Of a stretch of DNA of 64,000 bases, positions 18,435 to 35,949 are shown one piece after another. Both the position numbers and the translations under genes were made by a program. The DNA is taken from assembly GCA_965649825.1 (NCBI GenBank), contig OZ287710.1, positions 186,001 to 250,000 on the forward strand. Reading direction: 5' to 3'. The notes beneath the pieces are model-generated. The model was not told the DNA's origin and did not search any database. It worked only from the letters and a program-made list of their open reading frames with translations. Position 1 is the stretch's first letter. Each line of letters starts with the position of its first letter. The stretch is from Penicillus capitatus (Eukaryota; Plantae; Chlorophyta).

Positions 18435-21384
18435 CTAAACAATTGGTGGTCGATTTGGAGTAGAACTTGCAGCAACAGGGATATTTGCGTCATTACTTCC
18501 GAATCCGTCGTGCAAGTATGCAACATTTCCTTCTTCCGTCTCTTCTTGTATTTCAGATGTCCCCTCAGCCATGGTCGTCTGTACAACAGCATAAACCGTT
18601 GTTGGTGTATTCGGGGGAGATCCATCTGGTGGTGTGACTGGTACTCTCTTTTGCTGACTTTCTCGGAGTCGAGCAACAATAACCGCAAAAGGATGTCGTT
18701 CTCCTGTGCTAGCATTTTCGAGAAAAGCATGCTGCATGAGCACGGTGGACATGAAAGATTTGTGCCCCAGATCGTTTTGCTGGAGTATAGGAAAGAGATT
18801 CCTATCTAATCGATTCAGACAAGCAATAGTGGTTATCAACACCCAGAAAAGGCGCATAAGGGCGAAGAAAACGCCAAGAACTAAATGAACAGCAGTGTAG
18901 ACAAGCAGAAAGAGAAGAAAACAGAGTTCGTGATAGATGTGATATTTCTGTACGAGAATGCCCTCGGCGATCACCATTTGAGCGAGTGGTCCATTCAGCA
19001 GCCATGTGATGAGGAAAGCAATGAGAAATGCCAGAAAAGGACGCAAGATGACGAACACACGATGTTCAAAAATACTGACGATGAGGGACAGCAAGAGAGA
19101 GACGAATCCACCGAAAAGGACGAGCTGAATGACAGCTGTGCTTACTAAAATGCCAAAAAAGAATACAGAAGCGCCCATGGGATAACGGACGATGAGTTTC
19201 TTCCAGTTCCTCTCCGTCACAATATCTTCAACGCGATGAATGTTTGCCTCGGTTTCATTCTGTGGCTTAATAACGAGGTCCTCTGGCAGGTCCAGATTCT
19301 CAAAGAACCCACTGCGAATCGCGAGGGAGATCCTCTTGTACTGGGCTAGGACAGAGAGCAGTGAGTACATGCCGACAACGATGCCAGCCATAAGACCGAC
19401 CCAAATCGACCATCGTAGATGACGCAGTAGCTGATCGACCACATAGATGCTTCGTCCAATTGCCTGATCGCGGAAGACATCCGTTGGTGTTTTGGTTTCG
19501 TTGAGTGACGCATTCATGCTTCGTTCCAGTCGATTGATCAACAGGAGCGTCATGCAGGAGTTATCCGAGTGAGTTTCTGATGAGCAGCGAAAGTAACGCG
19601 AATCATGGAGAAGTTCCGTTTCAGGCGTCTCCCTTTCTCCAGCTGTCGGTGGGTTCATGTCGGGGTCGGCTGTTTGATTTCCCGGTTGATCGAGTGGCTG
19701 TTGTGTACCGAATGTGGCGGTGATATCTTCGAAGATCGCTGCGTCAAAATCCGCTCCTATACTGGAAGTGTCCACAGAACATGCTGCGTTCGTCAGTTCA
19801 GTTTCATCGCGTGCATTGAAAGCTTGGCCTGCGTTTGATGAAGCCTCTGTGAATCCTGCCAGTCGGAAGACAAAATTGCCAAGCTCGCCGTTGTTTTCGA
19901 TCGTCCAGACGGCGCAGTTGCGTCGTGGTATGTACATTTCGTCGATGAATTTGGAGGTGTAGGAGGCTATACCTACTCCAAAGTACAGCAGAAGGACAAA
20001 GGCGGTGCACATGGCAGCCAGGACCCAAGAGGAATGATGGAACTTGTCGTCTTCGCGAATGCCGGCATAGAGTTCGTCCACACCAGCGCGGAACTTCTCA
20101 CCAAAGTCTCGCCAGTACTGAACAGTACCACGAAAAGACTGTGTCATTTGTTGCATGGTCCGTTCTTTCATGCCAGGGTCCTCTTCGTTTTCTGCAGCAT
20201 TCCGGCTATAATGCATATCTGTTCTCTTAGGTGGATTCCAGATACCCTGCATCACACAGAACATGGCGTCTGGCCTGAACAGAACAGAAAACGGACCCAT
20301 GTCAAATAGGATATCATTCGTTTCCAGGTCTGAAAGACACGAGATTGTTCTATGCTGTCAAATATGTCTAGGAAGGAATCAGAGATGTCTTCGGTGATCG
20401 TCTTTTGGGACGCCACGCCTTCTAGAAGATTGTCCAATAGCCAACGAAGGCCACAGACGATGGCATTTGTTCCGCTCGATGTTTTCTGCAACAGCCAAGT
20501 GAACATTGCCCGAATAGAGCTGGCAATCTGCAGATATGACAGAAAATATCACAAAGGCTTATAAAAAACAAGGCATACGCGCGATCGCATGGTTGGCTGC
20601 GACCCGGGCCCTCCGTTCGAACCTTCAGTGGGCGTCTTTTGAGCATTGGGTGCGAATTCTTTGCGAATGTTGGACCATATTCTCCGTCTCTTTTGCTTTT
20701 TCTCATTTTTTTCCTCATTTTCTATCAGTTTTTTGTAGCTGGTGTTGCATGCCTCCAGGAAAAAGAAATCCATGGCCACTGTTGATAGGAACAGGATGCT
20801 GAACAAAAGGTAATGTGAGAATCCACTCTCATACTTATCGTGCTCGTCGTCCCTGTCGTTATACTTTAGCTGTGATGTGACCATGATAATGACCACCAAG
20901 AAATTGGCGACAACGGCACTGATGAAAGAGAGTGTCAGCCACAGTCGGTGACGGTTTAGCTGCTCTTCATCAAATTTATAGACATTGATGCTTAACAGCA
21001 TGAAGCTGTATGCTCCTATAAAGAGACACAGCAAGAGAAGCACCAGTGCTCGCACAATCTGGCGTCCAGCAGCTGACAGTGAATGCAAAGCGACAGTTTG
21101 TTCCAAGAGGACCTCGTCATCTTTATCCGTCTCTAAGAATCCAACATCAAAGTAAACCGTGGCAATCTGTCGTCCGCTTCTCAGCAAGGGCACAGCACGG
21201 AGGAAGCATTACGCACCGTAAATGCCAGCGTCGTCAGCACAGTGAGTGTGTAGGCGCGCGACTCCCCATCAAGAGAAGCGAGTTTTTGCCAGCCACGTTC
21301 TCGAAGTGTCGGGGCAGTCCTAAGCTGCGAATCCGAGGGCTTGTGGTGCGAGGAAGATGTCGCTTCGCTGTCATTGGTAGGCAT
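18435..21384 (-). CDS. ~900-aa multi-pass membrane protein, STRA6/RBP-receptor-family-like
   Basis: Exons join in frame: LAFT|IATVY, TMRSR|IASSI, YLTW|GIWNP. The C-terminal TM bundle and LNRLDRNLFP...NDLGHKSF...HP are colinear with human STRA6 as I recall it. Confidence 0.7.
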
Positions 21385-21791: not shown

Positions 21792-23502
21792 ATGGGAATG
21801 TGCCACAGCCGATGTTTAAGCGGCACCGATGTGATGACCAGCGCCGGATTAGGTCTTCCCAAAGAGTTTACCGTCATACGGGAATTGGGCTACGGTCAGG
21901 AAGGGAAGACATATCTTGTACAAGAAAAAACGTCAAAGGGGTAAGCCCATCCATCGTACCCTAGCATCTTAACTCTTACGTTGCGGACATGGCAGAACGA
22001 TGAAATTTGCACTAAAAGCTATTCCGCGAGGCAATTTACTGCACCCAGAATTCGTTCTACGTGGACTCCGAAATCAAAGGTATGGGTCAGAGACGACAGC
22101 TGAACCATCAAGATGATGGAACATCTGTGCTGCAGCTGTCTGTGTTTTGTCCACGTGGTGAAATTTTTGGAAGTGCTGTTGACACCGTCACATCTGATCA
22201 TCAAATTTGAATACGTCGACGGCGGGAACTTGTTCCGTAAGCATCACCTCCAGTCAAAGAACACAACGCAGACATTTGTGTGTGCAGAATATGTATGCCG
22301 ACAACCCAGTGTCGGCAGACATCAATTAATGGATGAGGAACACGCACGCTTCCTCTTTATTCAGATAGTCTACGCGCTGCATCATTGTCATGAACACCGT
22401 GTTGCACATAGAGATATTAAATTCGCAAATATCCTGTGCACAAGATCGAGGAATCCAATCATCAAGGTACGCACACACACACATCTGATGAAACAGAGGC
22501 CATACGGGAGGCATGGTGCTTGGTGTCCGCAGATTTGTGACTTCGGATTATCGAAGGGATGGGTGAATCCTCAGGATGCTATTTCGTTCTCTTCAGTGGG
22601 TTCACTGATGTTTATGTCCCCTGAAGTAGTGAGCGCACGCCACGCTACTGGAAAGAGAAAGCCCTATGATTTGTGTAAATCGGATGTATGGGGACTGGGC
22701 ATCATCCTTTTCACGATGCTCTTTGGCCGCTTCCCCTTTCTGAACTCGGGCTCTGTTGAATCCCGTGTCTCACGAGCCCATTTGCTGACAGGAAGCACAT
22801 CGACATTCTCTTTCCTTCTCAGGAGAATGGAAGTGGCACACCGCTCCGATCCACTAAGATTGACGAATGAGATTAGCCAGTCCGATCTGTCACCTGCCGT
22901 CAAGAAATTGTTATTGTCGATGCTCAATATCGATGAAAAACATGTAAGAAGTTCGATGCTTTGGTCGAGAAGGCAACTCATAGACATGTGTGTTCGTTAG
23001 AGAATCGGACTCGATCAGTTGATTGAGAATCCGTGGGTCAAAATTGGCTTGAGTCGCCAGCGTGCACGTGTGATTGCCAAAGTCCGATGGCCAGAGTATC
23101 TCCCATCCCCTCTCCTCTGTCATATCCATATGTTCTCCGAACAGGGAGCCGTCAGCAAGGAGCACAACCTATACGCCTGATGAAATTATGCCACCCCGAA
23201 GGAGAGATTCCAGGGTAAAAACAGGCATCACGTACATGCACGGTGAACTCATTCGCGGATCGCCGGCCGACAACGAGCTCGAGGAAATCGTGCATCGTGC
23301 GGCGCATCTTGGTGATCCGGATGATGACCTGGTAAGATGGTTGCCGCCTGGTGTCCGGCTCAGACGTAAGATATCAGCTGAAGAAAAAGCAAGTCTGGAA
23401 GCACAAGGCATACGTCTCTGTACCAAATGTCAGGAGGATCCAGAGGACAAGTACCATAACGAGTTTGGGAGTATTCGAATCATGCCACCCCACCACTACT
23501 AG
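21792..23502 (+). CDS. SnRK2-like/CAMK-group Ser/Thr kinase with MGxC lipidation-type N-terminus, multi-exon
   Basis: MGMCHSRC; Gly-loop LGYGQEGKTYLV; FALK; VVKFLEVLLTPSHL; HRDIKFAN; ICDFGLSK; SPEV; SDVWGLG. Introns 21941-21995, 22080-22135, 22237-22287, 22467-22532. Confidence 0.9.
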
Positions 23503-25023
23503 CATGCAAACTCAGACTTGTTTTTTCTTTTGACCTCAGTATCTGGCGGGATCAGGGTCGAGGGTTTCTTTGACACATGATAAATAGAAGTATCTTCAGA
23601 ATGCTTTGCCATATCTTTCTCCGTGTACCTCCCTTTTCAATTCAAACAGTGGATTAACGTCCATTGCAGGAGACATGAGCTACGCCAACGATCATGTAGC
23701 TCATGGCCGATTTAGTCTCCTCAATGGCGGCCTTTGAATATGGTTCAGTCGAGACGAATCATGGCTAAGTGAATTGCGATACGTTGTCGTTATTTGAAGC
23801 TTTGACATTGTACTCGTCATTCGCTTAACATGTTGTTCGTTTTTATTTTTTTGTTGGGGCAGAGGAAGAGAAACATGTCTGATTTGAGTTTCTCTGGCGC
23901 TGTCATGCTGATGATGAATTTGAATGGATGTCAGATTGCATATCCTGTTCTTCCTTTGCCAATGTTGTCTGGAATCGCATGCGTTGCAGGCCAACGATGT
24001 CCTGTTGTGCCATGCCATTGCGGACACGCGCTCATGCATTGGATATGCAGTAGGGCGGTCTCTGTTGACAAGCCTTGGTTTTCACATTGTTTGTCTCGTC
24101 TTGTTTGCTTATCTTTGTCTTTCCACGATCTGCGAACCACTTTTGAAATTGAGTTTGTAGACAAACCGTGTTCCAAAAGCGTTCTGATACTCTGTAGACA
24201 TCTGTGATGCACACTCTCTTTCTCCAAATTAACTTCGACTCTGTCTCGCATACTGTGGGGGAGCTGACTAGTAAAGACTTAACCTGGCGATGCTGGCATC
24301 TTGATCTTGGCACGACCCTATACTCATGGGTTCCTACAGATATCGTACTTCTGAAGTGTCCTTCGGCACTCAGGGGTATCTGACCCAACAAGTTACTTTT
24401 TGTCAATTGGTTTTCCTTAAACTACATACCAAATGATCGTAGGTGGAGGTCTGATGTCTGACAACAACATTCCTCTTGTTAGTAACAGTTTTATTACTTT
24501 ACTACAGAATACACGTGTACCACTTTGACGTTGACTCCATTTCATGCGTTTTTTACTAGTTCCTTAAGCTTATGTGTTTTGTGTGAAAGAAGAAGGACTA
24601 ATAAGGAAGAGGCTGATACCTTAATGCGTTTCGTTCATGTTCAGACTGAGTGTGTGTGGTTTCGTGTAAAACAATGACGGACGAGTCTATGAAGCTGCAA
24701 GAGAGAAAGATATCATCAATGTCTTAATTCTGTTTCGTCAATGCCCTTGTTCACTATTCTGTGTACACATCCTCGATGGTCAGGATCATTGATGTTTCTC
24801 CTGTCGCCAAACTGTAGTGTCAGTTTTGACAGTGTGGGAGGGGCAATCAATCAAGCGCTAATATTATAGATTAGAAGTGGTCACGTGGTTACTCTACGGA
24901 AGGATCCAGTTATAGTGACTCAACGTCTTTACTCCATTTTACATTCATCTCAATCACTTATTCATTCGTACATCAGGGTGTGTCTCTGACAAGGGTATCA
25001 TCAAACCGTTCGTTCGTTCGTTC

Positions 25024-26470
25024 TCACAGGAAAGGTTGTTTATCGAGAGGTTTATAGTCCGTCGTTTCGACTAGTACTTTGCCATCTGAGAGCCGGGGAA
25101 GTCTATCTGCTATTGGCTGATAAAAAACGCTGACTCTGTCTTCATCATAAACGCCTCTGCAGAAAACACAAGAAAGGATTGTGTAATTGGAAGTCGAGAA
25201 AAGGAAGAAGCCTAACTCAAGGGCATCCAGAAACTGTTGTTCGGCATCAACGACCTCCAACCATTGTTCATCTGTCTCTGCCACGACGCGACATGTCTCT
25301 AAGAGATGCGACGCTTTCTGAATCACATCCATACGCACAGATCAATGTCCTGTTAGCTCTCCATAGGACATCATTGCCGAACCTGGCAGTAACCAACAGA
25401 CACACCGGCATCGCCTTTGCCATGGTGCACAGCAGCTGCCTGCTGGTAAGCTCGAATCTGTTGGAGAGAGCTGTTCAATGCAATGAAGCGTCTGAGCTTC
25501 TCGCTTAATGTGTTGAACTTTCCTGTGTTGTGTCTCAAAACCGATGAGGCTTCCTCGAACAGATCAACAGCGCCAGAATAGAGCGAGGCAATGACGGCAG
25601 GAGAGGCCTTCTTTTCCAATGCCCTGAAAGCCACGAGCGTCTGCGCTTCGCCCAAACAGATCTTCTCGAAACACATGCTCATGACGGGCACCATCTCTGC
25701 ATGACTACACAACGCAAGGCAGCATAGAGCCATCGTGTCAGTCGGCGTCACCTATGGCCCTCGACAGCAACACTGTCGGCTGTCTGCTCACTGAGAACCG
25801 CATGAATGTGCTTGAATACACCAGCTGCTGACTTGAGTGCCTTCACACATTCAACAGCTGCCGCAGATCGATCGCCCCTTATCTTCATCATCTCATCCAC
25901 ACTGCCGTGAACTTGCTGCCGCCGTGCACAACCGTAGAGAAACATGACCTATCCATCTCACTCTTATACATACAAACGTAAAGAGTGAGATCCATACCAT
26001 CAAATGTTCCGAATGGATCCCTTTGAGAAGCATGAAGTTTGTTCCGCCGGCCAATGGTGATGTCCAGTAAAAATTCAGCTGCTTCTCTGTCTTGCCTGTC
26101 CAGTAAGTCTCCGACTATACAGGCAGGCCTATCTCACGCAAACGGTATCTCATTGGATGTCACACTTTTGAGTGGAGGTCCATCAGATGAAAGAGATAAG
26201 TTTCCAGTCTGTAGGAGAACAGACAGCCATGTAAGGCATTTAATGTACTAGGGGTATGTCGAACTTGTCCACTGGATCGTCGAGTTTTCCTTCGTGGATG
26301 TCTCGATTTTCTAAGGCACTTGCGCGCATGGCATTAAAAACTCTCAGACTCTCGAGCTCTCCAAGCGAGTTATGTTGCATGACTCTCACAAAGTCAAATG
26401 GCTTCGTGCAACATCGCTGCCACACGTCATTGAATACCAAGAGAGGCACAATATCGGACCGGCCATCCAT
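25024..26470 (-). CDS. BRO1-domain protein (BROX-like, no V domain), multi-exon
   Basis: KALKSAAGVFKHI, LGEAQTLVAFRA, IASLYSGAVDLF, DEDRVSVFYQPI...VLVETTDY. Confidence 0.75.
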
Positions 26471-26540
26471 CCTCGTCGAATTAACTCACGCGACGCAGTT
26501 GGCCTCTAATTTAAAACATTTAGCGAAAAATGACGCACAG

Positions 26541-27269
26541 TCAGTGTCCATGTTTTTCGACATAAGCATCAATCTCTTCTGGACTCAGTCCCTTCAGAGA
26601 GCAAAGGAGATGAGAGGCCAGTGGTGGTCATGAAGGGAGAGGGTACTTCATAGGGATCCTCTGCCGATGCTCCTGTGGTTTCTTTGACGAAACGTTCGAT
26701 CTGTCGAGGCGTGAAGCCTTCGAAGACATCCACATCTGCTGCAGTGACGCTCTTGCCTGCCAACACAGCACGGGCCACCTCTCTCTTCTTTGCCTCCAGT
26801 TCTCTCTCGGCCTGCGCTCCATTGCTCAATGGGTTACAATGTGGATGCTGGATGGCGATGACCTTCTCATCTTTTGGTTTCTCAGTCGAGGATGGACCGC
26901 GGATCCAGCTGAAGAGAAGAAAGGTCAAGCCTCCGACGAAGATCCACCAATAGACTTTCTCCCACGTATGCAGAGGAACACGCTCCCCGTCCATCTGCCG
27001 CTTCTCCCACGGAAACATGAGCCAACTCGACACTGTCCACAATCTCCCTTACGCTGCTTATGTGCTCAAGAACAAAGCATACCCGCTTTGGCTGTCTCTG
27101 TCTGCTGTTGTGCTTTGTTGCTAGCATCGTCCGCTTTTCTGTCGTGCGGAGGATGGCTGTAATGGACGGAACGTTTGTGGCTGATGCTGAGTGCTTCGAT
27201 GCTGCTGAGTTTCCAGATGTCTCTCTTGGCAGAGGCGAAACTGCGCAACAGGGCTGGCAGCCGCATCAT
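26541..27269 (-). CDS. Small single-TM protein with predicted mitochondrial presequence, unknown function, 4 exons
   Basis: MRLPALLRSFASAKR presequence; LHTWEKVYWWIFVGGLTFLLFSW TM; ends EDPYE|GLSPEEIDAYVEKHGH. Intron 26812-26862. Confidence 0.7.
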
Positions 27270-27290
27270 GATAAGTCATTTGACGTAAGG

Positions 27291-29065
27291 ATGCAACTGT
27301 CGTCCGAAGCACGCTCGCAGTTAAAGGGAGAACTCGCCGACGTGCTGAAATGGGATGAGATAGTGGTCGAAGGCGTCGTCGAGGCGATCACTTCTGCCCA
27401 AGACGATAAAGAAGTCGAAGAAATCGTCTCTGTAAGTTCCACCCACATCTTTCGACAGACAGACGACAAAACACAATGGCGCTGCCTTGCAGAATTTCAT
27501 GACGGAGTCGGAAGAGGCACGCCGAATCGTAGCGACATACATGCGAGCGAACTCAACAAAGCCCACGTCCCCACATAGACTTCCGACCGGCTACCCAGAT
27601 GCACCGAATGCAGGTACACATCGCTCTCGGTGATTGTTGGGAGTCTATGGCGCGGTATAGGAGAGCCATGGCAGCGTTACTCTAAGGGACAGCTCTTTAA
27701 TCCAAAGAAATCGTCGCATGGCATTTCCGTAAATTACTTGAAATACACGATCTCTCTAAAGTTGGTGGTGGTGATGTGACAGCAGGCGTCATCAAAGAAC
27801 AACAATTCAAAGAAGAGCAAAGGGAAGATGAAGAATGAGATTGAGGAAAAGAGACATCGACAGCCAATGCGTATCAAGATACGTTCCGTAGTGAATTGCC
27901 TGGAATGCGGGAAGATCTACAAGGCACGGAAGCTGATAGATGACACGTACACGTTCACTGGTCTGTTCGTTCGTTGTGTACGTATCTATCTTCATATGAT
28001 GATTGTCTCCTAGAGTCCAGTCTTGTGTGCAGTTTCTGTGGAGCCGTTATCGATTTAACACTTGAAAATCGTCAAGTGCAGATTCCGCAGCATCTTGACG
28101 AGGATAAGCTATTGGAAGCTCACAAGAAAGAGAACGAATCGGAGAGAAAGGCGAGAGAGTTTAAGGACAGACTGGTGGAATACGATCGACATGCATCCGA
28201 GAGAACGACAGTCCTCGACGACCAGAGTGACTACTTTGAGATCGACAGCAACGTCTGGCTAGAAGAGAAAGCAAGATGATCATCCACCATCAGTCTAACA
28301 TGCAAACACGGTTTATGAGACAGGAAAGGAAGGAATTGAGAATTCGGCGAGATATGGAAGACGAAATGGAAAAGTCCCTGAGGAAAAAAGTTTGAGAAAT
28401 AGATGGCTTGACATGGCATCCATCATCCCTCATTGCCTAGGTGCATTACACGATCGATCTGGTTGGACGACGGGTGTTTGCAAGCGAAGATGCTGCTCCG
28501 TCAGAAGACGCCAAGAAAACTGCCGATGCTGCACAGTCCGCAGCCGAGTTCACTTCCGAAGAGATCCCACAGGTTCCTCCTCCTCTGCATAACAGGATCA
28601 TTTTTGAGGGAAGAGAGGGTTAACAGGGAGGTGGCACGGCAGCCCGTTTAGCTTCTGAAACAGCATCGCGGCTGAGAATGAATGGGACAGCGACGTCATT
28701 CCGTGTTCACCCAAATCCCAATCTCGAAATGAGTTCTCCCATTTTTCTTCCAAGCGATGAAGCGCTGGAACGCTCCAAGAGACAAAGGCAACCGCCAAAA
28801 TGGATTCAAGGAAGCAAGGGACGTCTTCAACACGACGGTAATGCTGCCTGTCGCCGTCGGCATCTCGTTATGCGCGTCTCCTCCAGACATCTTTGCTGAC
28901 TTTGATATGAGCATTGAACCAGACGTCATGTCATCAGACGTTTCAGACTACGCGCATCTCTTCGCTGATGATGACACCAACAATGTCTACGATCTCTGCC
29001 CGCAAACGAAGGATAAGGACACCCCAGTTTCCACTCCAGGGCTCAAGTGTGTATCACATGTCTGA
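27291..29065 (+). CDS. TRIP4: ASC-1/TRIP4 (Rqt4)-like zinc-finger protein; stop 29063-29065 lies inside a probable intron, see fusion finding
   Basis: VVNCLECGKI...CSFCG; KAREFKDRLVEYDR..RTTVLDDQSDYFEIDSNVWL; TIDLVGRRV; RVHPNP; RLQHD. Nine exons traced in phase. Confidence 0.85.
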
Positions 29066-29097
29066 AAGGAAGGCACAGAGACGGTCCTGTTGTGTAG

Positions 29098-30015
29098 AGC
29101 GCCGCCATCTGCTGCTTCAGCCCACGTCCGAATGTCAGAAAGGTTGTTGCCGGAGCAGTATTATCCTCACAATACGATTCAGAAAGGGCCAGATCCACCT
29201 CGGTTAGTCCCAGGAGACGCACTTCCAGACGGCGTTGTTCTTATGAAGAGCTGGCTTTCGTTCGAAGAACAGATGAGAATTGTCGAAACGATTCGGAACT
29301 TAGGTATGAAAGAGGGTGGATTCTACACTCCATTCCATGAAGGCAAACCTCAACTGAGATACAAAATGATGTGTTTGGGATGGGTAACTTTATTCGATAT
29401 GCTGTTGTCACTTCATAGCCTTGTACTGTTTTCCCAGCATTGGAATCCTGTCAACAAAGACTACGAGAAGATTCGATCGAATCACGATGGGGCACTTGTT
29501 CCTCCGCTTCCAGATTTCCTCAAGGATCTGACACTCCGTTGCCTCAGCAATGCAAATCGACTTTGCAAGCATCCCTTTGCGAAGACCGATCCCAACTCTG
29601 GCATCTGCAATTTCTACACCCATAGCAGTTACCTCGGTCTCCACCAGGTACTCACCCACTCAGAAGTCTCACTCCTCATTCTCCATCCTACTCTGTTGTG
29701 CAGGATAGAAGCGAGGGACAGCAGAGCCTCAGTCGACAGCTTCCTGTCGTCTCTTTCTCGATCGGTGCCACCGGAGAGTTCGTTATCAGTCAGAGTCGGT
29801 CGATGGAGACTGCCCAATCGATTCTGCTCGAATCAGGCGATGCCTTGATCTTTGGCGGTCCATCTCGCATGATCTTCCACGGCATTCGCCGAATCTTTCC
29901 GGAGTCCATGCCATCCGAGTTGACGGAGACCATGGGTATGCGAAACGGACGACTGAATGTGACGATCCGTGAATATATACCCGACGTTCCTTTGTCGCCA
30001 TCAGCAGCAATGTAA
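29098..30015 (+). CDS. AlkB-family Fe(II)/2OG dioxygenase (E. coli AlkB/ALKBH1-like); own ATG at 29132 or fused to TRIP4
   Basis: MMCLGW|HWNP, CNFY...LGLHQ|DRSE (HxD), PVVSFSIG, LESGDALIFGG..R.IFHGI, RLNVTIR (RxxxxxR). Introns 29384-29437, 29648-29703. Confidence 0.92.
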
Positions 30016-30066
30016 CATGTGCGTGTCGTACGTACCACGCACGGCGTATTCGAGACCGCGACGCGG

Positions 30067-33026
30067 ATGTCTCATGTGATGCGTTTGTTGTCGCCGCGTC
30101 ATGTTCGCGTGCTGAGTCCTGCCGTGCCGTCGTCGGCAGCGACGCGTGTCAACCGTTCTCTCTTATCGCTCGGAACGTACTGTCGTTGCGGAAAGCTTTC
30201 GGAAATCGGCCGCGTGCGGCGTTTCGCGTCTTTCCGATACGGCAAACCTGTGTGCGCGCACGTCTCGCGCGGAGTCGTTCCCAACGAGATGGATACGGCA
30301 GAGGTGGTACAGATCGGTGAACTGTCACAGAGCTCGGCGCATTGGGTGACCTGTGACGTTGTGGCATGGAGGAAACAACAGACGGATGCCAAGGGCATAC
30401 ATTATCGCTTCAAACTCCATAGCTCCTACGATGCTGCCTTAGTCGCCACCAAAGATGGCGTGCTCAATGCCGAAACATCCATGCCGCTCCATGTGCTCAA
30501 TCGAAAGGAGCAGTTTACACGATTGGCCAAATTTCCTCATCTCTTTGGCAGTACCTTGCTCCAGTTGGATGAACCAGATCTGTTGGATTATCCGAAGATG
30601 CTGAAGTCTCAGTTGTGGATGTCATGTGAGACGCCGGAAGGGAAGGTGGTTGATGTGACAGGTGTTCAACTGCCTGGCGTCGTGGATGAGGTCTTTACCT
30701 TCGATGGACCGCTTGGATACCAGTGCCATTCTGGCAATATCGACTGTGTAAGGATCTGGGCACCAACGGCACATTCTGTCGATGTTCTCTGCTGGGAGAC
30801 GACACAAAATGAAGACCCTGAGGTATTGTCCATGCAACCGGCAGCAGGAGGTGTATGGGAAGTGCCGATCCCAGCTGAATGGCTCTGGAGGTTCTACAAG
30901 TTTCGATTACATGTGTACTGTCCTTGGACTTTGAAGATGGAGACCTTTGAAGTGACAGATCCCTACTCTAGAGGGCTCTCCGCCAATGGAGAACGCAGTC
31001 AATTTGTCGATTTGGATCATTCGCTGACGAAGCCTGAGAACTGGGACGCGCATGAGATTCCAGATCTAGACAGTTTCTCAGATATCAGCGTTTACGAGCT
31101 CCATGTGCGCGATTTCAGCGTCACAGATGATACAGTCCCATCAAAATTGCAAGGAAAATTCAGCGCTTTTAATCCCGGCCTCATACAAGCGCAAACCGGC
31201 TCGGTGTCGAATGGACTGGATCATTTGATGAAGCTCAGGTCGTCAGGAATGACACATATACATCTTCTACCCGTGTATGACTTCGCTTCTGTCCCTGAGC
31301 GTGCTGAAGAACGGTTGGATGTCACACTCGATCTCACACATTTTAGCCCAGCGTCCGAAGAACAACAGAAGGCAGTCGTTGACATTGCAGATCGGGATGG
31401 ATTCAATTGGGGATATGATCCCGTGCACTTTGGTGTCCCAGACGGGAGCTATGCCACCGATCCAGACGGCATCGCACGGCTGAAAGAGTTCAGGGAAATG
31501 GTCATGGGGCTGCATCAAATGGGCTATCGCGTTGTCCTGGATGTCGTTTACAATCACACCTTTGAAGGACAATCCGAACGCTACTCCGTCTTCGACAAAG
31601 CTGTTCCTGGATACTATCACAGGTAGTGACTCCACACTGGCCTCGCTTTGTGTGACGATGCTGTGCCAGACGCGAAGAGAACGGGGCGCTTTGCACGAGT
31701 GGTTGTGGAGCTAATACAGCATCAGAGCATGTGATGTTTGAGAAGTTTGTCGTGGATGATATCATTCACTGGGCCACGCATTACAAGATCGATGGTTTTC
31801 GTTTTGATATCATGGGACATCTGATGCTCTCCACAATGGAAAAGATTCGCACCGCGCTGGATGACCTGACAGTCGAATCCGATGGAGTGGACGGAAAGAA
31901 GATTTACCTCTATGGTGAAGGATGGGACTTTGGAGAAATGGCGAACAATCAACGAGGCCGCAATGCCCAGCAGTTGAATCTTGGTGGCACCGGGATAGGA
32001 ACGTTTAACGATCGTTTCAGAGACAGTGCCATGGGAGGGAGTCCTTTCGGTCCACCTCGATTTCAAGGGTTCATCACAGGACTCGCTCTACAACCCAATC
32101 CAGCACTCGACCAAGGATCTCCGCGTGCACAGATGCGCCAACTCATGGATCTTTCTGATCTTCTCAGAGCCACAATGGCTGGGAATTTGGTGGACTATGA
32201 AGTCTGTTCTGCTAATGGTGAATGGACACAGGGCAAGAAATTCAAATTCCATGGCCGTATTGGCGCATACAGTACCTTGCCTTACGAAAACGTGGTGTTC
32301 TGTGGATGCCATGACAATGAGACGCTTTTTGATCACGCCATCCTCAAAGCAGCTCCAGATGTGGACATCGATCAGAGGTCCAGAATGTGCGAGATGGCAT
32401 TGGCACTCGTTCTGCTGTCACAGGGAGTCGCTTTCATTCATGCTGGAGATGACATGCTTCGCAGCAAGAGCCTCGACAGAGACAGTTATAATTCCGGCGA
32501 TTGGTTTAACAAGATCGATTGGACTATGCAGTCGAACAACTTCGGCGTGGGTTTGCCTCCTGCCACCAAGAACGCGACATGGTGGTCGATCTACAAGCCA
32601 TTGCTGGCGGATCCAGGTCTCCGACCACATCCAGCTCTGATTCAGCGTTGTGCACAGCATGTTCAGAGTTATCTCAGGATTCGATATTCCTCCCCTCTGT
32701 TCCGTATCGACTGTCCAGATTTTATCCGGAAACAGTTGGTCTTCTACAACGCTGGGCAAAGACAGGTACCAGGGGTATTGGTGATGGAGCTGAACAGCTC
32801 TTACAGTTTGGGAGATGAGGGTGTCTATGATCCGCAGTTCAAGAGATTGGTGGCGATTTTCAATGCCCGTCCAGATACAGCAACGATCAAGTTTCCCACG
32901 AGCGGACTGGAATTGCACCCAGAGCTTTGCCACTCCGGTGATTATATTTACTCGGAAGTGGAAATCGGTCAAGATGAAGTTAAAGTACCCAGGCGGACAT
33001 CAGTTGTCCTGGTCGAAGAGCGTTGA
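30067..33026 (+). CDS. PUL1: Chloroplast pullulanase/limit dextrinase (GH13), 2 exons
   Basis: FNWGYDP, DVVYNHT, catalytic DGFRFDIMGH (Asp), YGEGWDFGE (Glu), CHDNETLFD (Asp); Arg/Ser-rich transit peptide; intron from 31624. Confidence 0.96.
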
Positions 33027-34429
33027 GTCATGTGCACCTTTTCTGCTACTTCTTTGACATATGCATTGGTGGATGGGGGCGCCTTCACATTTCCATAGCA
33101 ATGGAATTCATTCCTTTCTTGCACGACCTGATGTATCTCGGCTAAAGAAGGCAGACGCAGACGGGACTGTTCGTTTCCTTCGTTTTTGTTTTCTTGTTTT
33201 GTCTAGAACGCAAAGAACGAACAATGGACAAACGATAAAGCATTCTTGACAATGATCGAGAAGCATTGTGCATAGAAAACGGTGTCGTCACTCAAAAAAC
33301 TTGACAAACATCTGCAATGAGATATTACATCACTGGTCGATCCATACGGTATTGCCACGCATTCATCGATATAACAGATAACAGGCACAGCACCATACTG
33401 CTAACCTTGATGCATCGGAAACATGATCAGGATTAGAGAGTACTGGCTTCTGTCAAGTTCAGAAGAGCAATCATTACTGTCCGCGTGCGGGGTAACGAAT
33501 TGAGCATCTGTCGATAGGTCGTCGTTTTTTGCCAGACTCTGGTCTGTTTCCTGGCTCGCGTAAAGATCTACGCGTCTTGACAGATTGAGCCATTGTGTTT
33601 CGACCTCAGAGAAATGAGTTCATTCAGGTCGTTATGTGACCTGAATACTTGAATGATGTCATTCCGCATGTAAACCGGCAAGAATCACAGACCCTTTCCT
33701 CCTTTCTGGCTGGATAGGGATTCAGATGAGAGATGACAGTATAGCCTTGTTTCTTGAATAAATGAAGTGTAAAGAACGAAAGTTTTCAACTGTCCGAATA
33801 AAACCTTCGTTGTTGTTCGATTGACAAGGAACTCATGAACAGAAGTGTTCGTTGCCATATGGATAATGACTGAATGGTGCATCACGCTTCTTCGTCATCG
33901 ATGCCCATAATCTTGTGGCAGATGCAATTCTTCAGTGGCCAGAAGAAGAGTCATGTGATTTTTACAGGAAGCAAGAACGGAACATTCCTATCGCGTTGCG
34001 TATTTTTGCCACGTTTACTGAACGGCTTCTGTATTACACAACTCTTCAAGCTGTGAAAAGACAGGTTTCCAAAGTTCAATGACATCCATGCGGCAACTCA
34101 GTGAGCAACATCACTGGAAACATCCCCATATGCGTCTTGAGCCTCGGCAAAAAATGGCACAGCACACTTGCGATGTCCTGAATGCGGAGAAAGCAGTTGC
34201 ATGGAAGAGTGTTTAACGCATGAACAGAGAGACCCACAGTAGTATGACTTTAACATTCGACATAACCACAGAATAGAAAAAACATCACCGGTCTAAATTT
34301 CAGAGGGCGGAAATCGGTTGGGTTGCTATCTGATTAACAGTTGTAGGTTAGCCTGTGGCAGAAGCCGAGCTCGATGTCGCGGATACCGAGCCCGATGCCG
34401 TGGCTTTTCCAATAACACCGCCTTCTGTG

Positions 34430-35040
34430 ACCTATGCAACGATTCTTAATATGTCCTGCTTAAACAGGAAGCTCCTCACTGTTGCAGGGGTTTGACACCC
34501 CTTTCCCTGGCTGGGCAAGTTGAACCTGACTATGTCTGCTCCGATCTCATAAGGAACTCCCAGATTAAGGAGAATACCCACAGCGAAGACTTCTTCCTTC
34601 TTGTAATCTGGTTCGGCGACGTGCTGCCTGAGCTGCTCCGGGGTCGATTTTGGGTCGATGCACAAGTTTCCGACATTTGAAGGATAAAGACAACCGGGGT
34701 TACCTAAAAGGCACTCAGTAATTTCGTGACGTTCTCCACAGAACGTTTACCTGGATTAGGGGAAGGGGAAGGAACTGCAGATTTGCTAGAGACAGGACCT
34801 CGAAGAGAAATACGAAGAGAGGAAGATCTTGGTGGGTTTCCTTTGAGCGTGAGATACCACGCATTCGCCCCATCCGTCAACAAGTGTCTTCCTGAAAACT
34901 CAACTTCCGATGCCTTTGCTCGGAGTGCATCTTTTCCCTCAGCACTTTTCGCGACGACGCGCGACGCTGCGCAAAACACAACACTTCTAACTGAAGTGCG
35001 ATTTTTGCAATACAAGGTTACCACTGCATGAAGCGACATA
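34430..35040 (-). mobile_element. Decayed Ty3/gypsy-type gag fragment
   Basis: VEFSGRHLLTDGANAWYLTLKGNPP resembles the retrotransposon gag core (fa..lL.g.A..W); reading frames broken downstream. Confidence 0.35.
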
Positions 35041-35949
35041 ATACACGACGATCTGCGACAGATAACATCGGGTTAGCAAAGATAGATCGCCCGACAAGCG
35101 CAACGTTTGGTGGGCCTTACAACGAAAAAGACATAGAGCTTTTCAACCAGAGTCCACATGATGAAAGGAGAGTGCTTTAGAAATCAACTTCGCGACTTGA
35201 TCTGCAAAAACAAAACTCTGCATATGGAATATTTTCGCCGCTTAAATACTCGAGCGCGGTGAACACATCTTCAACGCCGTTTCCTGGCCGTTCTCTCGTG
35301 CTGAGAAGTTCGCAGTGCTGTATGCGCCTAGCGTATCGCTGCTGGACAGCTGCATGTTTGCCGAGTTTGCGGATCCCGCGAGAACCACACGATGGATGAC
35401 GTGGCGCGACGCATGCAAAGCCCTTCGCTGAGGTGTCCCTTGATTGGCCCTGTTCGCTAACTTGCCCGTTGTTTCGCTTTTCTTTCCTGCTTTCCACATC
35501 TGAACTGTTGTCGACATCATGGCTAGGAAGACGCCGTTTTTGCATTCTGGATAAGGTCCTCGATCTTACTTGCAGTGACCGCGATGGAATGCATACAACG
35601 TCTGACAGTCGACACGAGGCAGCCGATCAGCTACTTACCTCGACTTCTAATTCAGTCTTGTGTACGCACAAGCATTCTAGTTTGAATTTCCGTAGAAAAC
35701 GCGAGCGACCGCGTCTTCGAACGACATGATCATGAACTAGACACGGGAAATGATTATGGCCTCACAAGGCAAGAGAGATGTCGAAAGCCCGTTTCAGAAG
35801 GTTATGTACGCTTGGATTATCTCCCTCCCCGTTCGACATCCACTTGGTTCACCGAGGTCACCCATCATCTTGATCATTCGAGTGATGTCTAGAGCTTGTA
35901 TTGGAGAGAAGGGGGGACTCTAGGCACCATTCCTACCTTTGTGTGGCAC

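What the first reader, a model, noticed from the sequence alone, without database searches (positions are those of the whole stretch)
27291..30015. Probable spliced fusion of ASC-1/TRIP4 (Rqt4) with an AlkB demethylase
Seen: all TRIP4 exons stay in phase up to ...TPVSTPGLK. Its only stop (TGA 29063-29065) lies within a typical 51-nt GT..AG intron-like segment (29047-29097; 29049-29099 also keeps frame). Splicing it continues straight into the AlkB frame (K|APPSAASAHVRMSERLLPEQ) with intact HxD..H and RxxxxxR, giving about 715 aa. Established: the mammalian ASCC complex, which includes TRIP4, works with ALKBH3 in alkylation repair; TRIP4/Rqt4 acts in ribosome-collision rescue (RQT); animal TRIP4 ends in an ASCH domain. 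Inference: here AlkB replaces ASCH, a Rosetta-stone fusion coupling stalled-ribosome rescue to RNA/DNA dealkylation. Intron retention would give two separate proteins 66 nt apart.
Basis: partly seen in the sequence, partly recalled or inferred. Interest (0 to 1): 0.8.

Follow-up and report, generated by a model that had tools for sequence, protein, structure and literature searches.

The report
Spliced TRIP4–AlkB fusion gene
This green-alga locus is most likely one 12-exon gene joining a ribosome-rescue/helicase adaptor (TRIP4) to an AlkB nucleic-acid demethylase; the same fusion occurs across plants, algae and some other eukaryotes, so this copy is a new member of a little-discussed kind.

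Summary
The sequence observation is correct. The TRIP4 frame ends at TGA 29063-29065. That stop lies in a 51-nt GT..AG segment (29047-29097), and removing it joins ...TPGLK to APPSAASAHVRMSERLL... in frame.

That pattern alone is weak: 31-37% of random spacers allow it. Comparative evidence makes it convincing.
- Homology to an intron-free relative (L001) and to Caulerpa continues across the junction and breaks only over the proposed intron.
- A conspecific contig (99.3% identical) has a 4-nt insertion inside the proposed intron. It has a 3-nt, in-frame insertion just after the acceptor, upstream of the AlkB ATG.
- The FD[IL]C motif of the AlkB module lies on the TRIP4 side of the stop.
- All 11 introns are 47-61 nt.

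The model is 12 exons and 713 aa.

TRIP4+AlkB proteins also occur in Caulerpa, Prasinococcus, Tetraselmis, Volvox, Closterium, liverworts, a lycophyte, a fern and non-green protists, several from transcripts. The AlkB domain is of the rice OsALKBH1 / plant ALKBH1C-D type, not ALKBH3. Outside green plants AlkB follows ASCH rather than replacing it.

No RNA data exist for this organism, and the function is inferred only.

The parts
27291..30015 (+). Whole gene: ATG to TAA, 12 exons and 11 introns, CDS 2142 nt, 713 aa
   Evidence: Gene model built from frames and homology. There are 20 synonymous and 7 non-synonymous differences from a conspecific contig in this frame. No minus-strand ORF of 90 aa or more lies inside.
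27291..27431 (+). Exon 1 (TRIP4 N-terminal helix region)
   Evidence: The start aligns with the N-termini of chlorophyte TRIP4 proteins P0003, P0004 and P0009. Intron 1 is 27432-27492, 61 nt, GTAAGT..GCAG.
27493..27613 (+). Exon 2
   Evidence: The donor is GTACAC at 27614. A G>A change at 27610 in the conspecific contig removes the rival GC donor.
27661..27728 (+). Exon 3, a 68-nt micro-exon in a low-complexity linker; the least certain exon
   Evidence: It is the only canonical GT-AG path that keeps phase, with flanking introns of 47 nt (27614-27660) and 54 nt (27729-27782). An acceptor at 27663 is an equally possible alternative. There is no homology support.
27783..27960 (+). Exon 4 (first half of the zinc knuckle, NCLECG)
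   Evidence: Aligns with Caulerpa and L001.
28014..28270 (+). Exon 5 (CSFCG and the start of the TRIP4 third domain)
   Evidence: Intron 4 (27961-28013, 53 nt) gives the same spacing as Caulerpa: KLSEAIYKFIDSGGICDFCG against KLIDDTYTFTESSLVCSFCG.
28271..28323 (+). Intron 5, a GC-AG intron (aaa|GCAAGA..GACAG), 53 nt
   Evidence: Only this donor keeps the conserved WLEEK|ERKEL seen in L001 and Caulerpa. The conspecific contig has a 1-nt indel here.
28324..28389 (+). Exon 6
28441..28572 (+). Exon 7
   Evidence: SLRKK|VHYTIDL matches L001 SHRRQVHYTIDL.
28627..28837 (+). Exon 8 (ends in RLQHD)
   Evidence: EEIPQ|GGGTA and RLQHD|D match L001 and Caulerpa.
28887..29046 (+). Exon 9: linker carrying the YDLCP motif; the last exon before the junction intron
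   Evidence: Homologous to the same linker in L001 and Caulerpa. Standalone chlorophyte TRIP4 proteins stop just after RLQHDD and lack this segment.
29047..29097 (+). Intron 9, the junction intron: caa|GTGTGT...TGTGTAG|agc, 51 nt, phase 2. The alternative 29049-29099 uses a disfavoured GAG acceptor
   Evidence: Its length falls within the local range of 47-61 nt. Homology to L001 and Caulerpa is absent only here. The conspecific contig has a 4-nt insertion after 29081. The other ten acceptors are seven CAG and three TAG.
29063..29065 (+). In-frame TGA inside intron 9. If the intron is retained, the product is a 450-aa TRIP4-only protein ending ...GLKCVSHV
29098..29383 (+). Exon 10. Its first 34 nt (29098-29131, APPSAASAHVR) are coding sequence upstream of the AlkB ATG
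   Evidence: Aligns to L001 SAPVVSANTR and Caulerpa SAPVSANTR. The conspecific contig has a 3-nt in-frame insertion (extra Pro) and a synonymous change at 29125. The Met is Leu in Caulerpa.
29132..29134 (+). Internal ATG (Met457), which would start a 257-aa AlkB-only protein under the rival model
   Evidence: A product from this ATG would lack the conserved FD[IL]C motif.
29438..29647 (+). Exon 11
   Evidence: Intron 10 is 29384-29437 (54 nt). MMCLGW|HWNP matches AlkB homologues.
29704..30015 (+). Exon 12, ending in TAA 30013-30015
   Evidence: Intron 11 is 29648-29703 (56 nt) and splits HQ|D.
27894..28042 (+). Reduced zinc knuckle CxxC...CxxC, homologous to the second half of the TRIP4 C2HC5 finger, with an 11-residue insert
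   Evidence: Alignment with bird TRIP4 and the fused streptophyte proteins. BLASTP to bird TRIP4 gives 2e-18 from this point on. Pfam zf-C2HC5 is not matched.
28220..28479 (+). TRIP4 third domain (PF23134), residues 239-290
   Evidence: Pfam 3.6e-16. Human TRIP4 8ALZ matches at 3.1e-11. Coordinates.
28988..29002 (+). YDLCP: the FD[IL]C motif of the AlkB module, upstream of the stop and the intron
   Evidence: The motif occurs at a fixed distance before the catalytic domain in 77 of 117 homologues that have an N-terminal extension, including AlkB-only angiosperm proteins. In the AF2 model of P0002 it is an island of pLDDT 81 in a disordered linker.
29231..29970 (+). AlkB catalytic domain (PF13532, full length), residues 490-699, with HQD (29642-29706), His in FHGIRR (29875-29892) and RLNVTIR (29950-29970)
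   Evidence: Pfam 4.4e-38 over profile positions 1-194 of 194. Rice OsALKBH1 5XEG matches at 8e-48 with the motifs aligned. Coordinates.

Best explanation
Window 27291-30015 (+) is a single nuclear gene of a chlorophyte alga with tiny introns.

The segment 29047-29097 is an ordinary phase-2 spliceosomal intron. Removing it yields one 713-aa protein.
- The N-terminal part is a chlorophyte-type TRIP4/ASC-1/Rqt4 module: an N-terminal helix region, a reduced C4 zinc knuckle, the TRIP4 third domain and a lasso-like region ending in RLQHDD.
- A flexible linker carrying an FD[IL]C motif follows.
- The C-terminal part is an intact Fe(II)/2-oxoglutarate AlkB dioxygenase of the plant ALKBH1C/1D (OsALKBH1) type.

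Shown here: the gene structure, the domain content, the intact catalytic residues, purifying selection in the fused frame, and the conservation of this architecture in many other eukaryotes.

Inferred mechanism: human TRIP4 docks on the ASCC3 helicase through its zinc finger and places its C-terminal domain at the nucleic-acid exit of the helicase (PMC10076317). By analogy, the TRIP4 module here would tether the dioxygenase to the ASCC3/Slh1 helicase. Single-stranded RNA or DNA extruded by the helicase, for example mRNA from stalled or collided ribosomes, would then be oxidatively demethylated on the spot. The confidence value applies to the gene structure and fusion. The tethering mechanism is roughly even odds.
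For: 1. Fused relatives. P0001 (Caulerpa lentillifera, 655 aa), P0002/L001 (JGI contig) and P0013/P0037 (Prasinococcus, a complete MMETSP transcript ORF) carry PF23134 + PF13532. The L001 contig has one uninterrupted 574-codon ORF from the zinc finger to the AlkB stop. 27 of 188 fetched proteins carry both parts in the same order. They include Riccia, Calypogeia, Diphasiastrum, Psilotum, Closterium, Volvox and Tetraselmis.

2. Junction. The TRIP4 piece aligns to the L001 ORF up to residue 314, and the piece translated from 29066 starts aligning at residue 314 with its 13th residue. The residues encoded inside the proposed intron are the only unaligned ones.

3. Conspecific contig L003, 99.28% identical over 12.8 kb. 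Its only three indels are +1 nt in the GC-AG intron, +4 nt inside the proposed intron and +3 nt (one extra Pro) in 29098-29131. Exonic substitutions are 20 synonymous to 7 non-synonymous in the fused frame, including one synonymous change upstream of the ATG.

4. FD[IL]C motif. This motif belongs to the AlkB module in AlkB-only plant proteins (77 of 117). Here it lies in exon 9, upstream of the stop. It is predicted to be ordered.

5. Introns. All 11 introns are 47-61 nt, and the junction intron has a TAG acceptor like the others.

6. Start codon. The Met at 29132 is Leu in Caulerpa.

7. Domain assignment..
Against: - There are no RNA or protein data from this organism. One metagenome scan found no transcript of it, and neither protein search returned a transcript-derived match from this species.
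- The GT..AG pattern alone is expected by chance in about a third of spacers.
- The donor GTGTGT is the only one of the 11 with G at position +3.
- In Tetraselmis and in the GEMP01 transcriptome, transcripts that do not splice the equivalent junction exist. The fusion may therefore not be the only product.
- The zinc finger has lost half of its ligands, so ASCC3 docking is not assured.
- Human TRIP4 and ALKBH3 exclude each other on ASCC3 (PMC10076317), so the human complex is only a loose precedent.
Confidence: 0.85

Rival explanations
1. Dual-output locus. The junction intron is spliced only part of the time. Splicing gives TRIP4-AlkB. Retention, or intronic polyadenylation in other species, gives a 450-aa TRIP4-only protein ending ...GLKCVSHV. 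The cell would thereby choose whether TRIP4 carries a dealkylase. This extends the main explanation rather than excluding it.
For: - Tetraselmis: the transcript contig L005 and the MMETSP ORFs P0009, P0039 and P0041 run past ...SAAPA into GTAGGC..., stop after 5 codons, and have TGTAA 17 nt before the contig end. The JGI gene model P0040 continues into AlkB.
- GEMP01 transcriptome: P0197 (522 aa, TRIP4+ASCH only) has a tail starting with Val after ...DYQ. P0148 and P0198 are the fused forms of the same gene.
- Window: the in-frame stop lies 16 nt into the intron, and the donor is atypical.
Against: - Unspliced pre-mRNA is common in transcriptome assemblies, so these isoforms may be noise.
- In the window the intron is only 51 nt and has no TGTAA.
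- Retention with the two downstream introns spliced would probably make the mRNA a target of nonsense-mediated decay (inference).
- There are no expression data for this species.
Confidence: 0.3
2. Two separate genes. TRIP4 ends at TGA 29063-29065, and an independent AlkB gene starts at ATG 29132 with its own promoter. The GT..AG is a coincidence.
For: - The bare pattern arises by chance in 31-37% of simulated spacers.
- Trebouxiophyte TRIP4 genes are truly standalone. In Coccomyxa viridis the downstream neighbour is a Peptidase_C78 gene.
- AlkB-only proteins are the rule in angiosperms.
Against: - Exon 9 and 29098-29131 are homologous to the linker of the fused relatives.
- The FD[IL]C motif of the AlkB module lies upstream of the stop.
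- Upstream of the ATG there is an in-frame 3-nt indel and a synonymous change, against a 4-nt indel in the intron.
- 66 nt leaves no room for a 3' end and a promoter. The next intergenic gap, from the AlkB stop to the probable pullulanase ATG at about 30290 (my reading), is about 270 nt.
- Met457 is not conserved.
Confidence: 0.04
3. Bicistronic mRNA. One unspliced transcript carries both ORFs, and AlkB is translated by leaky scanning or reinitiation, as described for polycistronic loci in some green algae (from my own knowledge, not checked here).
For: The two ORFs are on the same strand only 66 nt apart.
Against: - The upstream ORF is about 1.35 kb and contains many AUGs, which makes leaky scanning implausible (inference).
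- All the evidence for coding continuity across the junction applies here too.
Confidence: 0.02
4. A decaying or mis-assembled locus. The stop would be a recent inactivating mutation or an assembly error in a formerly continuous ORF.
For: None specific.
Against: - The same TGA and the same GT/AG are present in an independent conspecific assembly.
- The ratio of 20 synonymous to 7 non-synonymous changes indicates purifying selection on both halves.
- The catalytic residues are intact.
Confidence: 0.02

Closest known systems
TRIP4-AlkB fusion proteins of other Viridiplantae, all uncharacterised database entries: Caulerpa lentillifera g543.t1, Prasinococcus capsulatus, Tetraselmis striata TSEL_044420, Riccia sorocarpa KAL3691554.1, Diphasiastrum complanatum KAJ7531020.1, Closterium GJP34498.1, Volvox reticuliferus GIL84063.1. 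Ginkgo GbALKBH1B is reported with a zf-C2HC5 domain in PMC13296198.
   Same: - The order of parts is the same: TRIP4 zinc finger, third domain, RLQHDD, linker with FD[IL]C, then the AlkB domain.
- The window's AlkB domain forms a clade with Caulerpa and L001 with support 100.
- Identity is 41% with Caulerpa and 56% with P0002 for the TRIP4 piece.
- Identity is 66% with P0002 over the AlkB domain.
   Different: - Streptophyte members keep the full C2HC5 finger. The window and other chlorophytes keep only CxxC...CxxC with an 11-residue insert, and the window has also lost the Cys of the YDCR motif.
- This copy is not in the protein collection searched.
Rice OsALKBH1 (PDB 5XEG/5XOI) and the angiosperm ALKBH1C/1D-like group, named 'DNA N6-methyladenine demethylase'
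   Same: - It is the best sequence match for the AlkB domain: 8e-48, with HxD, H and RxxxxxR aligned.
- It is the best structural match for the close relative P0002: TM 0.89-0.91, rmsd 2.0 Å.
- The FD[IL]C motif before the catalytic domain is shared.
- In the tree the AlkB-only angiosperm proteins nest among fused streptophyte proteins.
   Different: The angiosperm proteins lack the zinc finger and the TRIP4 third domain. The reported activity is 6mA removal from DNA, with ssDNA activity (as summarised in PMC8118384). Whether that applies to the fused algal protein is unknown.
Animal TRIP4/ASC-1 (human 8ALZ) and yeast Rqt4, subunits of the ASCC/RQT complex
   Same: The third domain and the second half of the zinc finger are homologous. 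The general layout of N-terminal region, zinc finger, third domain and extended peptide is also shared.
   Different: - There is no ASCH domain.
- The first CxC...H half of the finger is lost.
- A dioxygenase is attached at the C-terminus.
- In human, the ASCH domain sits at the nucleic-acid exit of ASCC3 and stimulates the helicase (PMC10076317). Here AlkB occupies the C-terminal position.
TRIP4 + ASCH + AlkB proteins of non-green eukaryotes: Digyalum oweni GHVL01024486, EukProt GEMP01014740, MMETSP Transcript_11133 and several metagenomic proteins
   Same: TRIP4 is N-terminal and an AlkB domain of the same family is C-terminal. There are alternative isoforms at the junction.
   Different: They retain TRI4_N, the full C2HC5 finger and an ASCH domain between the third domain and AlkB.
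Human ASCC-ALKBH3 alkylation-repair complex
   Same: The functional logic is the same: an AlkB-family dealkylase working on single strands produced by the ASCC3 helicase (PMC10076317).
   Different: - ALKBH3 is a separate protein that binds ASCC3 in competition with TRIP4 (PMC10076317).
- The window's AlkB is not ALKBH3-like. No ALKBH2/3 sequence hit appears even at E<=10, and the TM-score is 0.61-0.65 against 0.9 for OsALKBH1.

Membership tests
TRIP4 / ASC-1 / Rqt4 | TRIP4 third domain (Pfam PF23134) | tested here: met
   E = 3.6e-16, 59.7 bits against a cut-off of 27.7, profile positions 1-52 of 54. Human TRIP4 8ALZ residues 262-347 match at 3.1e-11.
TRIP4 / ASC-1 / Rqt4 | C2HC5 zinc finger (Pfam PF06221), the ASCC3-docking element in human | tested here: not met
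   There is no Pfam match at E<=0.1. The alignment shows only NCxxCG...CxFCG, four Cys, with an 11-residue insert. The CxC...H half is absent, as in all chlorophyte homologues, including those that NCBI/UniRef name 'Activating signal cointegrator 1'. The retained half is homologous to bird TRIP4. I therefore call this a chlorophyte-type TRIP4 homologue with a reduced finger, not a canonical family member.
TRIP4 / ASC-1 / Rqt4 | C-terminal ASCH domain (animal form) | tested here: not met
   There is no PF04266 match. The position is taken by a linker plus AlkB. ASCH is also absent from the other green-lineage homologues, fused or not.
TRIP4 / ASC-1 / Rqt4 | Binding to the ASCC3/Slh1 helicase and a role in ribosome-collision rescue | not testable with these tools
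   This needs co-purification or genetics.
AlkB Fe(II)/2OG dioxygenases (Pfam 2OG-FeII_Oxy_2) | Full-length domain match | tested here: met
   E = 4.4e-38, profile positions 1-194 of 194.
AlkB Fe(II)/2OG dioxygenases (Pfam 2OG-FeII_Oxy_2) | HxD...H iron triad and RxxxxxR 2-oxoglutarate site | tested here: met
   HQD (residues 609-611), His669 in FHGIRR and R693-x5-R699 align with the same motifs of rice OsALKBH1.
AlkB Fe(II)/2OG dioxygenases (Pfam 2OG-FeII_Oxy_2) | Oxidative demethylase activity and its substrate (m1A/m3C/6mA; RNA or DNA) | not testable with these tools
   This needs an enzyme assay.
Plant ALKBH1C/1D (OsALKBH1) subgroup | Closest to this subgroup rather than to other AlkB subfamilies; shared FD[IL]C motif before the domain | tested here: met
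   - 5XEG matches at 8e-48, against 1e-10 for mammalian ALKBH1 and 4e-9 for E. coli AlkB.
- The named hits are ALKBH1C/1D-like.
- The motif count is and the tree.
ALKBH3 (the ASCC-associated dealkylase of mammals) | Sequence or structural affinity to ALKBH3/ALKBH2 | tested here: not met
   No ALKBH2/3 chain is found even at E<=10. Foldseek TM is 0.61-0.65 for ALKBH3 against 0.89-0.91 for OsALKBH1 (relative P0002 used).
TRIP4-AlkB fusion architecture | Both modules in one ORF, TRIP4 N-terminal, supported by mature transcripts | tested here: inconclusive
   This is met in relatives: the L001 uninterrupted ORF, the Prasinococcus MMETSP transcript, Psilotum, and the GEMP01 and Digyalum transcriptome assemblies. 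For this organism there is only indirect evidence and no RNA.
Spliceosomal intron (29047-29097) | GT-AG ends, length typical for the genome, non-coding pattern of variation, gap in homology | tested here: met
   - The ends are GTGTGT..TAG, and its 51 nt fall within the local 47-61 nt range.
- A conspecific has a 4-nt indel inside it.
- It is the only stretch of the junction without homology.
Spliceosomal intron (29047-29097) | Removal from the mRNA | not testable with these tools
   No transcript data for this species were found.

The most novel reading that the evidence does not exclude
The junction intron is a conserved switch. From green algae to alveolate-related protists, one gene makes either plain TRIP4 or TRIP4 carrying an AlkB dealkylase, depending on whether the intron between the two modules is spliced. 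This would solve in cis the either/or choice that human cells make between TRIP4 and ALKBH3 on ASCC3. As a corollary, the plant 'ALKBH1' 6mA DNA demethylases (OsALKBH1, AtALKBH1C/D) would descend from this helicase-tethered enzyme. Their ancestral, and perhaps still main, substrate would then be damaged or modified RNA at stalled ribosomes rather than genomic 6mA.
Probability: 0.25. Interest if true: 0.7.

Novelty: new member of a known kind. Interest (0 to 1): 0.5.

Why it matters
A natural fusion is independent evidence that two proteins act together. In this case it links the TRIP4 subunit of the ASCC/RQT helicase complex to an AlkB dealkylase across plants, algae and some protists. In human cells TRIP4 and the dealkylase ALKBH3 exclude each other on ASCC3. 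The fusion therefore supports an old and widespread coupling of helicase-driven clearance of stalled ribosomes or transcription to direct reversal of base methylation.

The AlkB domain is of the OsALKBH1 / ALKBH1C-D type, which is currently interpreted as a DNA 6mA eraser in plants. Its fused ancestry prompts a re-examination of the real substrates of that group.

For genome annotation, the locus shows how a tiny intron holding an in-frame stop can split one gene into two predicted genes. On the conspecific contig, ORF-by-ORF gene calling did exactly that.

Tried and rejected
1. First model for the exon 2-3 junction: a 173-nt GC-AG intron (27610-27782). I rejected it because the conspecific contig has A instead of G at 27610. 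A path with two canonical introns of about 50 nt and a 68-nt micro-exon exists instead.

2. The alternative splice pair 29049-29099 also keeps the frame. It needs a GAG acceptor, whereas the other ten acceptors are CAG or TAG. I kept it only as a minor alternative.

3. Search for RNA of this species. The search for related loci on JGI metagenome contigs with the AlkB piece returned one distant locus, L004 at 39% identity, and nothing from this species. The two protein searches returned no transcript-derived match from this species.

4. Test of whether standalone chlorophyte TRIP4 genes simply have an unrecognised AlkB neighbour. In Coccomyxa viridis the downstream gene is a Peptidase_C78, so TRIP4-only is real there.

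5. Test of whether the bare GT..AG pattern is significant. It is not, at 31-37% by simulation.

6. Literature. Seven searches found no paper that discusses a TRIP4-AlkB fusion. The only trace is a passing note of a zf-C2HC5 domain in Ginkgo GbALKBH1B (PMC13296198). The Aravind-group review PMC4738411 discusses TRIP4/ASCH and AlkB fusions to SAD/SRA, but the passages I searched for TRIP4/ASCH do not mention this fusion.

7. tRNA, Rfam and tandem-repeat scans of the window found nothing relevant.

8. I did not feed any protein read through the stop to a search tool.

Full report
**What is in the sequence**

The window is eukaryotic, about 49% G+C, with densely packed genes and very short introns.
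- Between 27291 and 30015 on the + strand, the three frames hold a chain of open segments.
- Their products match the TRIP4 third domain (PF23134, 3.6e-16).
- Further on they match a full-length AlkB-type 2OG-Fe(II) oxygenase domain (PF13532, 4.4e-38).
The frame carrying ...TPVSTPGLK is closed by one stop, TGA 29063-29065.
- GT 29047 with AG 29097 delimits 51 nt. Removing it gives ...GLK|APPSAASAHVRMSERLL in frame.
- The pair 29049/29099 also works.
- The AlkB ATG lies at 29132, 66 nt after the stop.
- No ORF of 90 aa or more lies on the opposite strand.

**Gene model**

Using homologues as guides, I resolved 12 exons and 11 introns.
- Two features were not in the finding.
- Intron 5 (28271-28323) is GC-AG. 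Only that donor preserves the conserved WLEEK|ERKEL.
- Exons 2 and 4 can be joined in phase only through a 68-nt micro-exon (27661-27728) between introns of 47 and 54 nt.
- My first idea for that junction, a 173-nt GC-AG intron, is contradicted by a G>A change at the putative donor in a conspecific contig.
- The micro-exon has no homology support and is the least certain exon.
- The introns measure 61, 47, 54, 53, 53, 51, 54, 49, 51, 54 and 56 nt.
- The proposed junction intron is the ninth, is phase 2, and is 51 nt with a TAG acceptor.
- The other ten acceptors are seven CAG and three TAG. That favours 29047-29097 over 29049-29099, which would use GAG.
- The spliced CDS is 2142 nt and 713 aa.
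- If the intron is retained, the product is a 450-aa TRIP4-only protein.

**Is the pattern more than chance?**

By itself it is not.
- In a simulation with the window's base composition, 37% of random 66-nt spacers can be bridged by an in-frame GT..AG of 45-62 nt that removes the stop.
- For spacers of 30-120 nt the figure is 31%.
- The case rests on what follows.

**Evidence from relatives**

A search with the TRIP4 piece alone returned three proteins that also carry the AlkB domain.
- P0001 is from Caulerpa lentillifera.
- P0013/P0037 are from Prasinococcus capsulatus, a complete ORF from an MMETSP transcript.
- P0002 is from a 1767-nt JGI contig.
- That contig, L001, has one uninterrupted reading frame of 574 codons, from the zinc finger to the AlkB stop.
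- The window gene has ten introns over the same stretch, so L001 behaves like a cDNA.
- Scoring Caulerpa P0001 against 1.84 billion representatives and re-scoring the hits with the two window pieces showed 27 of 188 fetched proteins with both modules, TRIP4 first.
- The named ones come from Riccia, Calypogeia, Diphasiastrum, Psilotum (a transcript), Closterium, Volvox and Tetraselmis.
- Riccia, Diphasiastrum and Closterium have exactly zf-C2HC5 + TRIP4_3rd + 2OG-FeII_Oxy_2.
- Outside the green lineage, Digyalum oweni, the EukProt transcriptome GEMP01, an MMETSP transcript and several metagenomic proteins have TRI4_N + zf-C2HC5 + TRIP4_3rd + ASCH + AlkB.
- AlkB was therefore added behind a complete TRIP4, and the green lineage lacks the ASCH domain.
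- 'AlkB replaces ASCH' describes the present state in green plants but not the history.

**The junction itself**

I aligned the two window pieces separately to the L001 ORF.
- The TRIP4 piece ends at L001 residue 314.
- The piece translated from 29066 begins at residue 314 with its 13th residue.
- The residues that would be encoded inside the intron (CVSHV* and KEGTETVLLCR) are the only ones without a counterpart.
- The 34 nt between the acceptor and the ATG encode APPSAASAHVR. This aligns with SAPVVSANTR in L001 and SAPVSANTR in Caulerpa.
- The Met is Leu in Caulerpa.

**A second copy of the same species**

The best AlkB hit, P0138, led to a 493-kb ENA contig.
- It holds the same gene order: TRIP4, AlkB, pullulanase.
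- Its 12.8-kb stretch, L003, is 99.28% identical to window 23059-35848.
- It has only three indels, all in this gene:
  - +1 nt in the GC-AG intron;
  - +4 nt inside the proposed junction intron;
  - +3 nt (one more Pro) in the short coding stretch right after the acceptor.
- In L003 the two ORFs are therefore out of frame when unspliced and in frame when spliced.
- Exonic substitutions are 20 synonymous to 7 non-synonymous in the fused frame. One of them is a synonymous change (29125) upstream of the ATG.
- Each single event is weak, but together they match the exon/intron map.
- The ORF-by-ORF gene calls on that contig split the locus into fragments. This shows how such a gene gets mis-annotated.

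**A motif on the 'wrong' side of the stop**

A profile of the N-terminal halves of fused proteins also hits AlkB-only plant proteins, but only over its last third.
- The shared element is an FD[IL]C motif ('PFDIC').
- It sits at a fixed distance before the catalytic domain in 77 of 117 homologues that have an N-terminal extension, angiosperm proteins included.
- The fern Adiantum protein also keeps an RVQHDD relic.
- In the window the motif (YDLCP, 28988-29002) lies in exon 9, upstream of the stop.
- An AlkB protein started at Met457 would lack it.
- In an AlphaFold model of P0002 the motif is an island of pLDDT 81 in an otherwise disordered linker.
- The junction falls in the low-confidence part of that linker, as expected for a domain boundary.

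**What kind of AlkB**

- The closest solved structure by sequence is rice OsALKBH1 (5XEG, 8e-48). Mammalian ALKBH1 (about 1e-10) and E. coli AlkB (about 4e-9) follow.
- No ALKBH2, 3, 5 or FTO chain appears even at E<=10.
- Named database hits are angiosperm 'DNA N6-methyladenine demethylase ALKBH1C/1D-like' proteins.
- The P0002 model superposes on OsALKBH1 with TM 0.89-0.91, on E. coli AlkB with 0.86 and on ALKBH3 with 0.61-0.65.
- A quick FastTree tree of 104 AlkB domains puts the window with L001 and Caulerpa (support 100).
- In that tree the AlkB-only angiosperm proteins nest among fused streptophyte proteins.
- The fused state needs 7 changes on the tree, against about 29 in shuffles.
- This suggests that the plant ALKBH1C/D group lost the TRIP4 part. 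The tree is quick and its sampling is biased.

**What kind of TRIP4**

- The third domain is clear.
- BLASTP to a bird TRIP4 covers residues 142-290 (2e-18).
- The zinc finger is reduced in all chlorophytes to NCxxCG...CxFCG with an 11-residue insert. The window has also lost the Cys of YDCR.
- Pfam zf-C2HC5 and ASCH are not matched.
- I therefore treat the N-terminal half as a chlorophyte-type TRIP4 homologue, not a canonical member.

**How it probably works**

- Shown: one gene, an intact catalytic site, and selection on both halves.
- Inferred from PMC10076317: human TRIP4 docks on the C-terminal cassette of ASCC3 by its zinc finger. A lasso peptide then places the C-terminal ASCH domain at the nucleic-acid exit.
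- The same paper reports that TRIP4 and ALKBH3 bind ASCC3 mutually exclusively.
- In the fusion, the dioxygenase sits where ASCH sits in animals, or just behind ASCH in the non-green versions.
- The simplest mechanism is therefore that TRIP4 tethers the dealkylase to the helicase, which feeds it single-stranded RNA or DNA.
- Whether the reduced finger still binds the helicase is untested. So is the identity of the base that is removed.

**Alternative products**

- In Tetraselmis, several transcript ORFs and the contig L005 run past the junction into GTAGGC..., stop after five codons and show TGTAA 17 nt before the contig end. The JGI model continues into AlkB.
- In GEMP01, a 522-aa TRIP4+ASCH isoform and two fused isoforms come from one gene and diverge exactly at the junction.
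- The junction intron may thus be used as a switch, or these transcripts may simply be unspliced RNA.
- For the window nothing can be said without RNA. Retention there would probably expose the mRNA to nonsense-mediated decay (inference).

**Novelty**

- The architecture is visible in public protein sets, with Pfam domains already computed.
- A 2026 Ginkgo gene-family survey notes a zf-C2HC5 domain in GbALKBH1B in passing (PMC13296198).
- In seven full-text searches I found no paper that interprets it.
- This locus is therefore a new member of an existing but barely discussed kind.

**Limits**

- There is no RNA or protein evidence for this species.
Its affinity to Ulvophyceae/Bryopsidales rests only on the Caulerpa and L001 relationship.
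- Exon 3 is uncertain.
- The function is inferred.

Noticed in passing
window 28271-28323: A GC-AG intron (aaa|GCAAGA...GACAG, 53 nt) in the TRIP4 part. It is required to keep the conserved WLEEK|ERKEL. The conspecific contig has a 1-nt indel inside it.
   Followed up: yes
window 23059-35848 = L003 1-12798 (ENA ERZ25074695, contig ctg340356_47x_l): A second assembly of the same species is 99.28% identical. All three indels in the 12.8 kb fall inside the TRIP4-AlkB gene. The ORF-by-ORF gene calls on that contig split the gene into many fragments.
   Followed up: yes
L005 about 1483-1613 (JGI 3300017053, Tetraselmis transcript): A TRIP4-only transcript continues past the module junction into GTAGGC..., stops after 5 codons and has TGTAA 17 nt before the contig end. 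TGTAA is the usual green-algal poly(A) signal (from my own knowledge). This looks like intronic polyadenylation at the same junction where the JGI gene model P0040 splices to AlkB.
   Followed up: partly
P0148 / P0197 / P0198 (EukProt, TSA prefix GEMP01; organism not identified here): Three isoforms of one gene diverge exactly after ...KKRLPDYQ. One is TRIP4+ASCH only (522 aa) and two are fused to AlkB (737 and 764 aa).
   Followed up: partly
P0188/P0201 (Digyalum oweni), P0157, P0129, P0167, P0186, P0155: Outside the green lineage the fusion keeps the ASCH domain: TRI4_N + zf-C2HC5 + TRIP4_3rd + ASCH + AlkB. The fusion is therefore older or more widespread than Viridiplantae. Contamination of these transcriptomes was not excluded.
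   Followed up: partly
P0052 (Adiantum nelumboides), P0051 (Helianthus), P0249 and P0227 (Dendrobium), P0300 (Vicia): AlkB-only land-plant ALKBH1C/D-like proteins keep the linker motif PFDIC, and the fern keeps an RVQHDD relic of the TRIP4 C-terminus. In a quick tree they nest among fused streptophyte proteins. This suggests the plant '6mA demethylase ALKBH1' group descends from the fusion.
   Followed up: partly
window 29384-29437: Intron 10 (54 nt) is the only intron of 3n length in the gene without an in-frame stop. If retained it would insert 18 residues (VTLFDMLLSLHSLVLFSQ) into the AlkB domain without ending the frame.
   Followed up: no
window 27894-28042 and the homologues: All chlorophyte TRIP4 homologues, fused or not, have lost the first CxC...H half of the C2HC5 finger and gained an 11-residue insert. 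Streptophyte and non-green fused proteins keep the full finger.
   Followed up: partly
window 30019-33026: A pullulanase / limit-dextrinase gene (Pullulanase_N2, CBM_48) follows. Its probable ATG lies near 30290, about 270 nt after the AlkB stop. It has a 47-nt intron at about 31625-31671 (GTAGTG..GCCAG). The same neighbour is present in L003.
   Followed up: partly
window 37783-43183: A run of very long + strand ORFs encodes a protein rich in Chlamydia-PMP-type repeats. A Cys-rich segment and a multi-pass membrane region follow (my reading of the translations). The family was not identified.
   Followed up: no
window 18435-20300 (-): A 621-aa ORF with several hydrophobic stretches has no Pfam match at E<=1e-5.
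   Followed up: no
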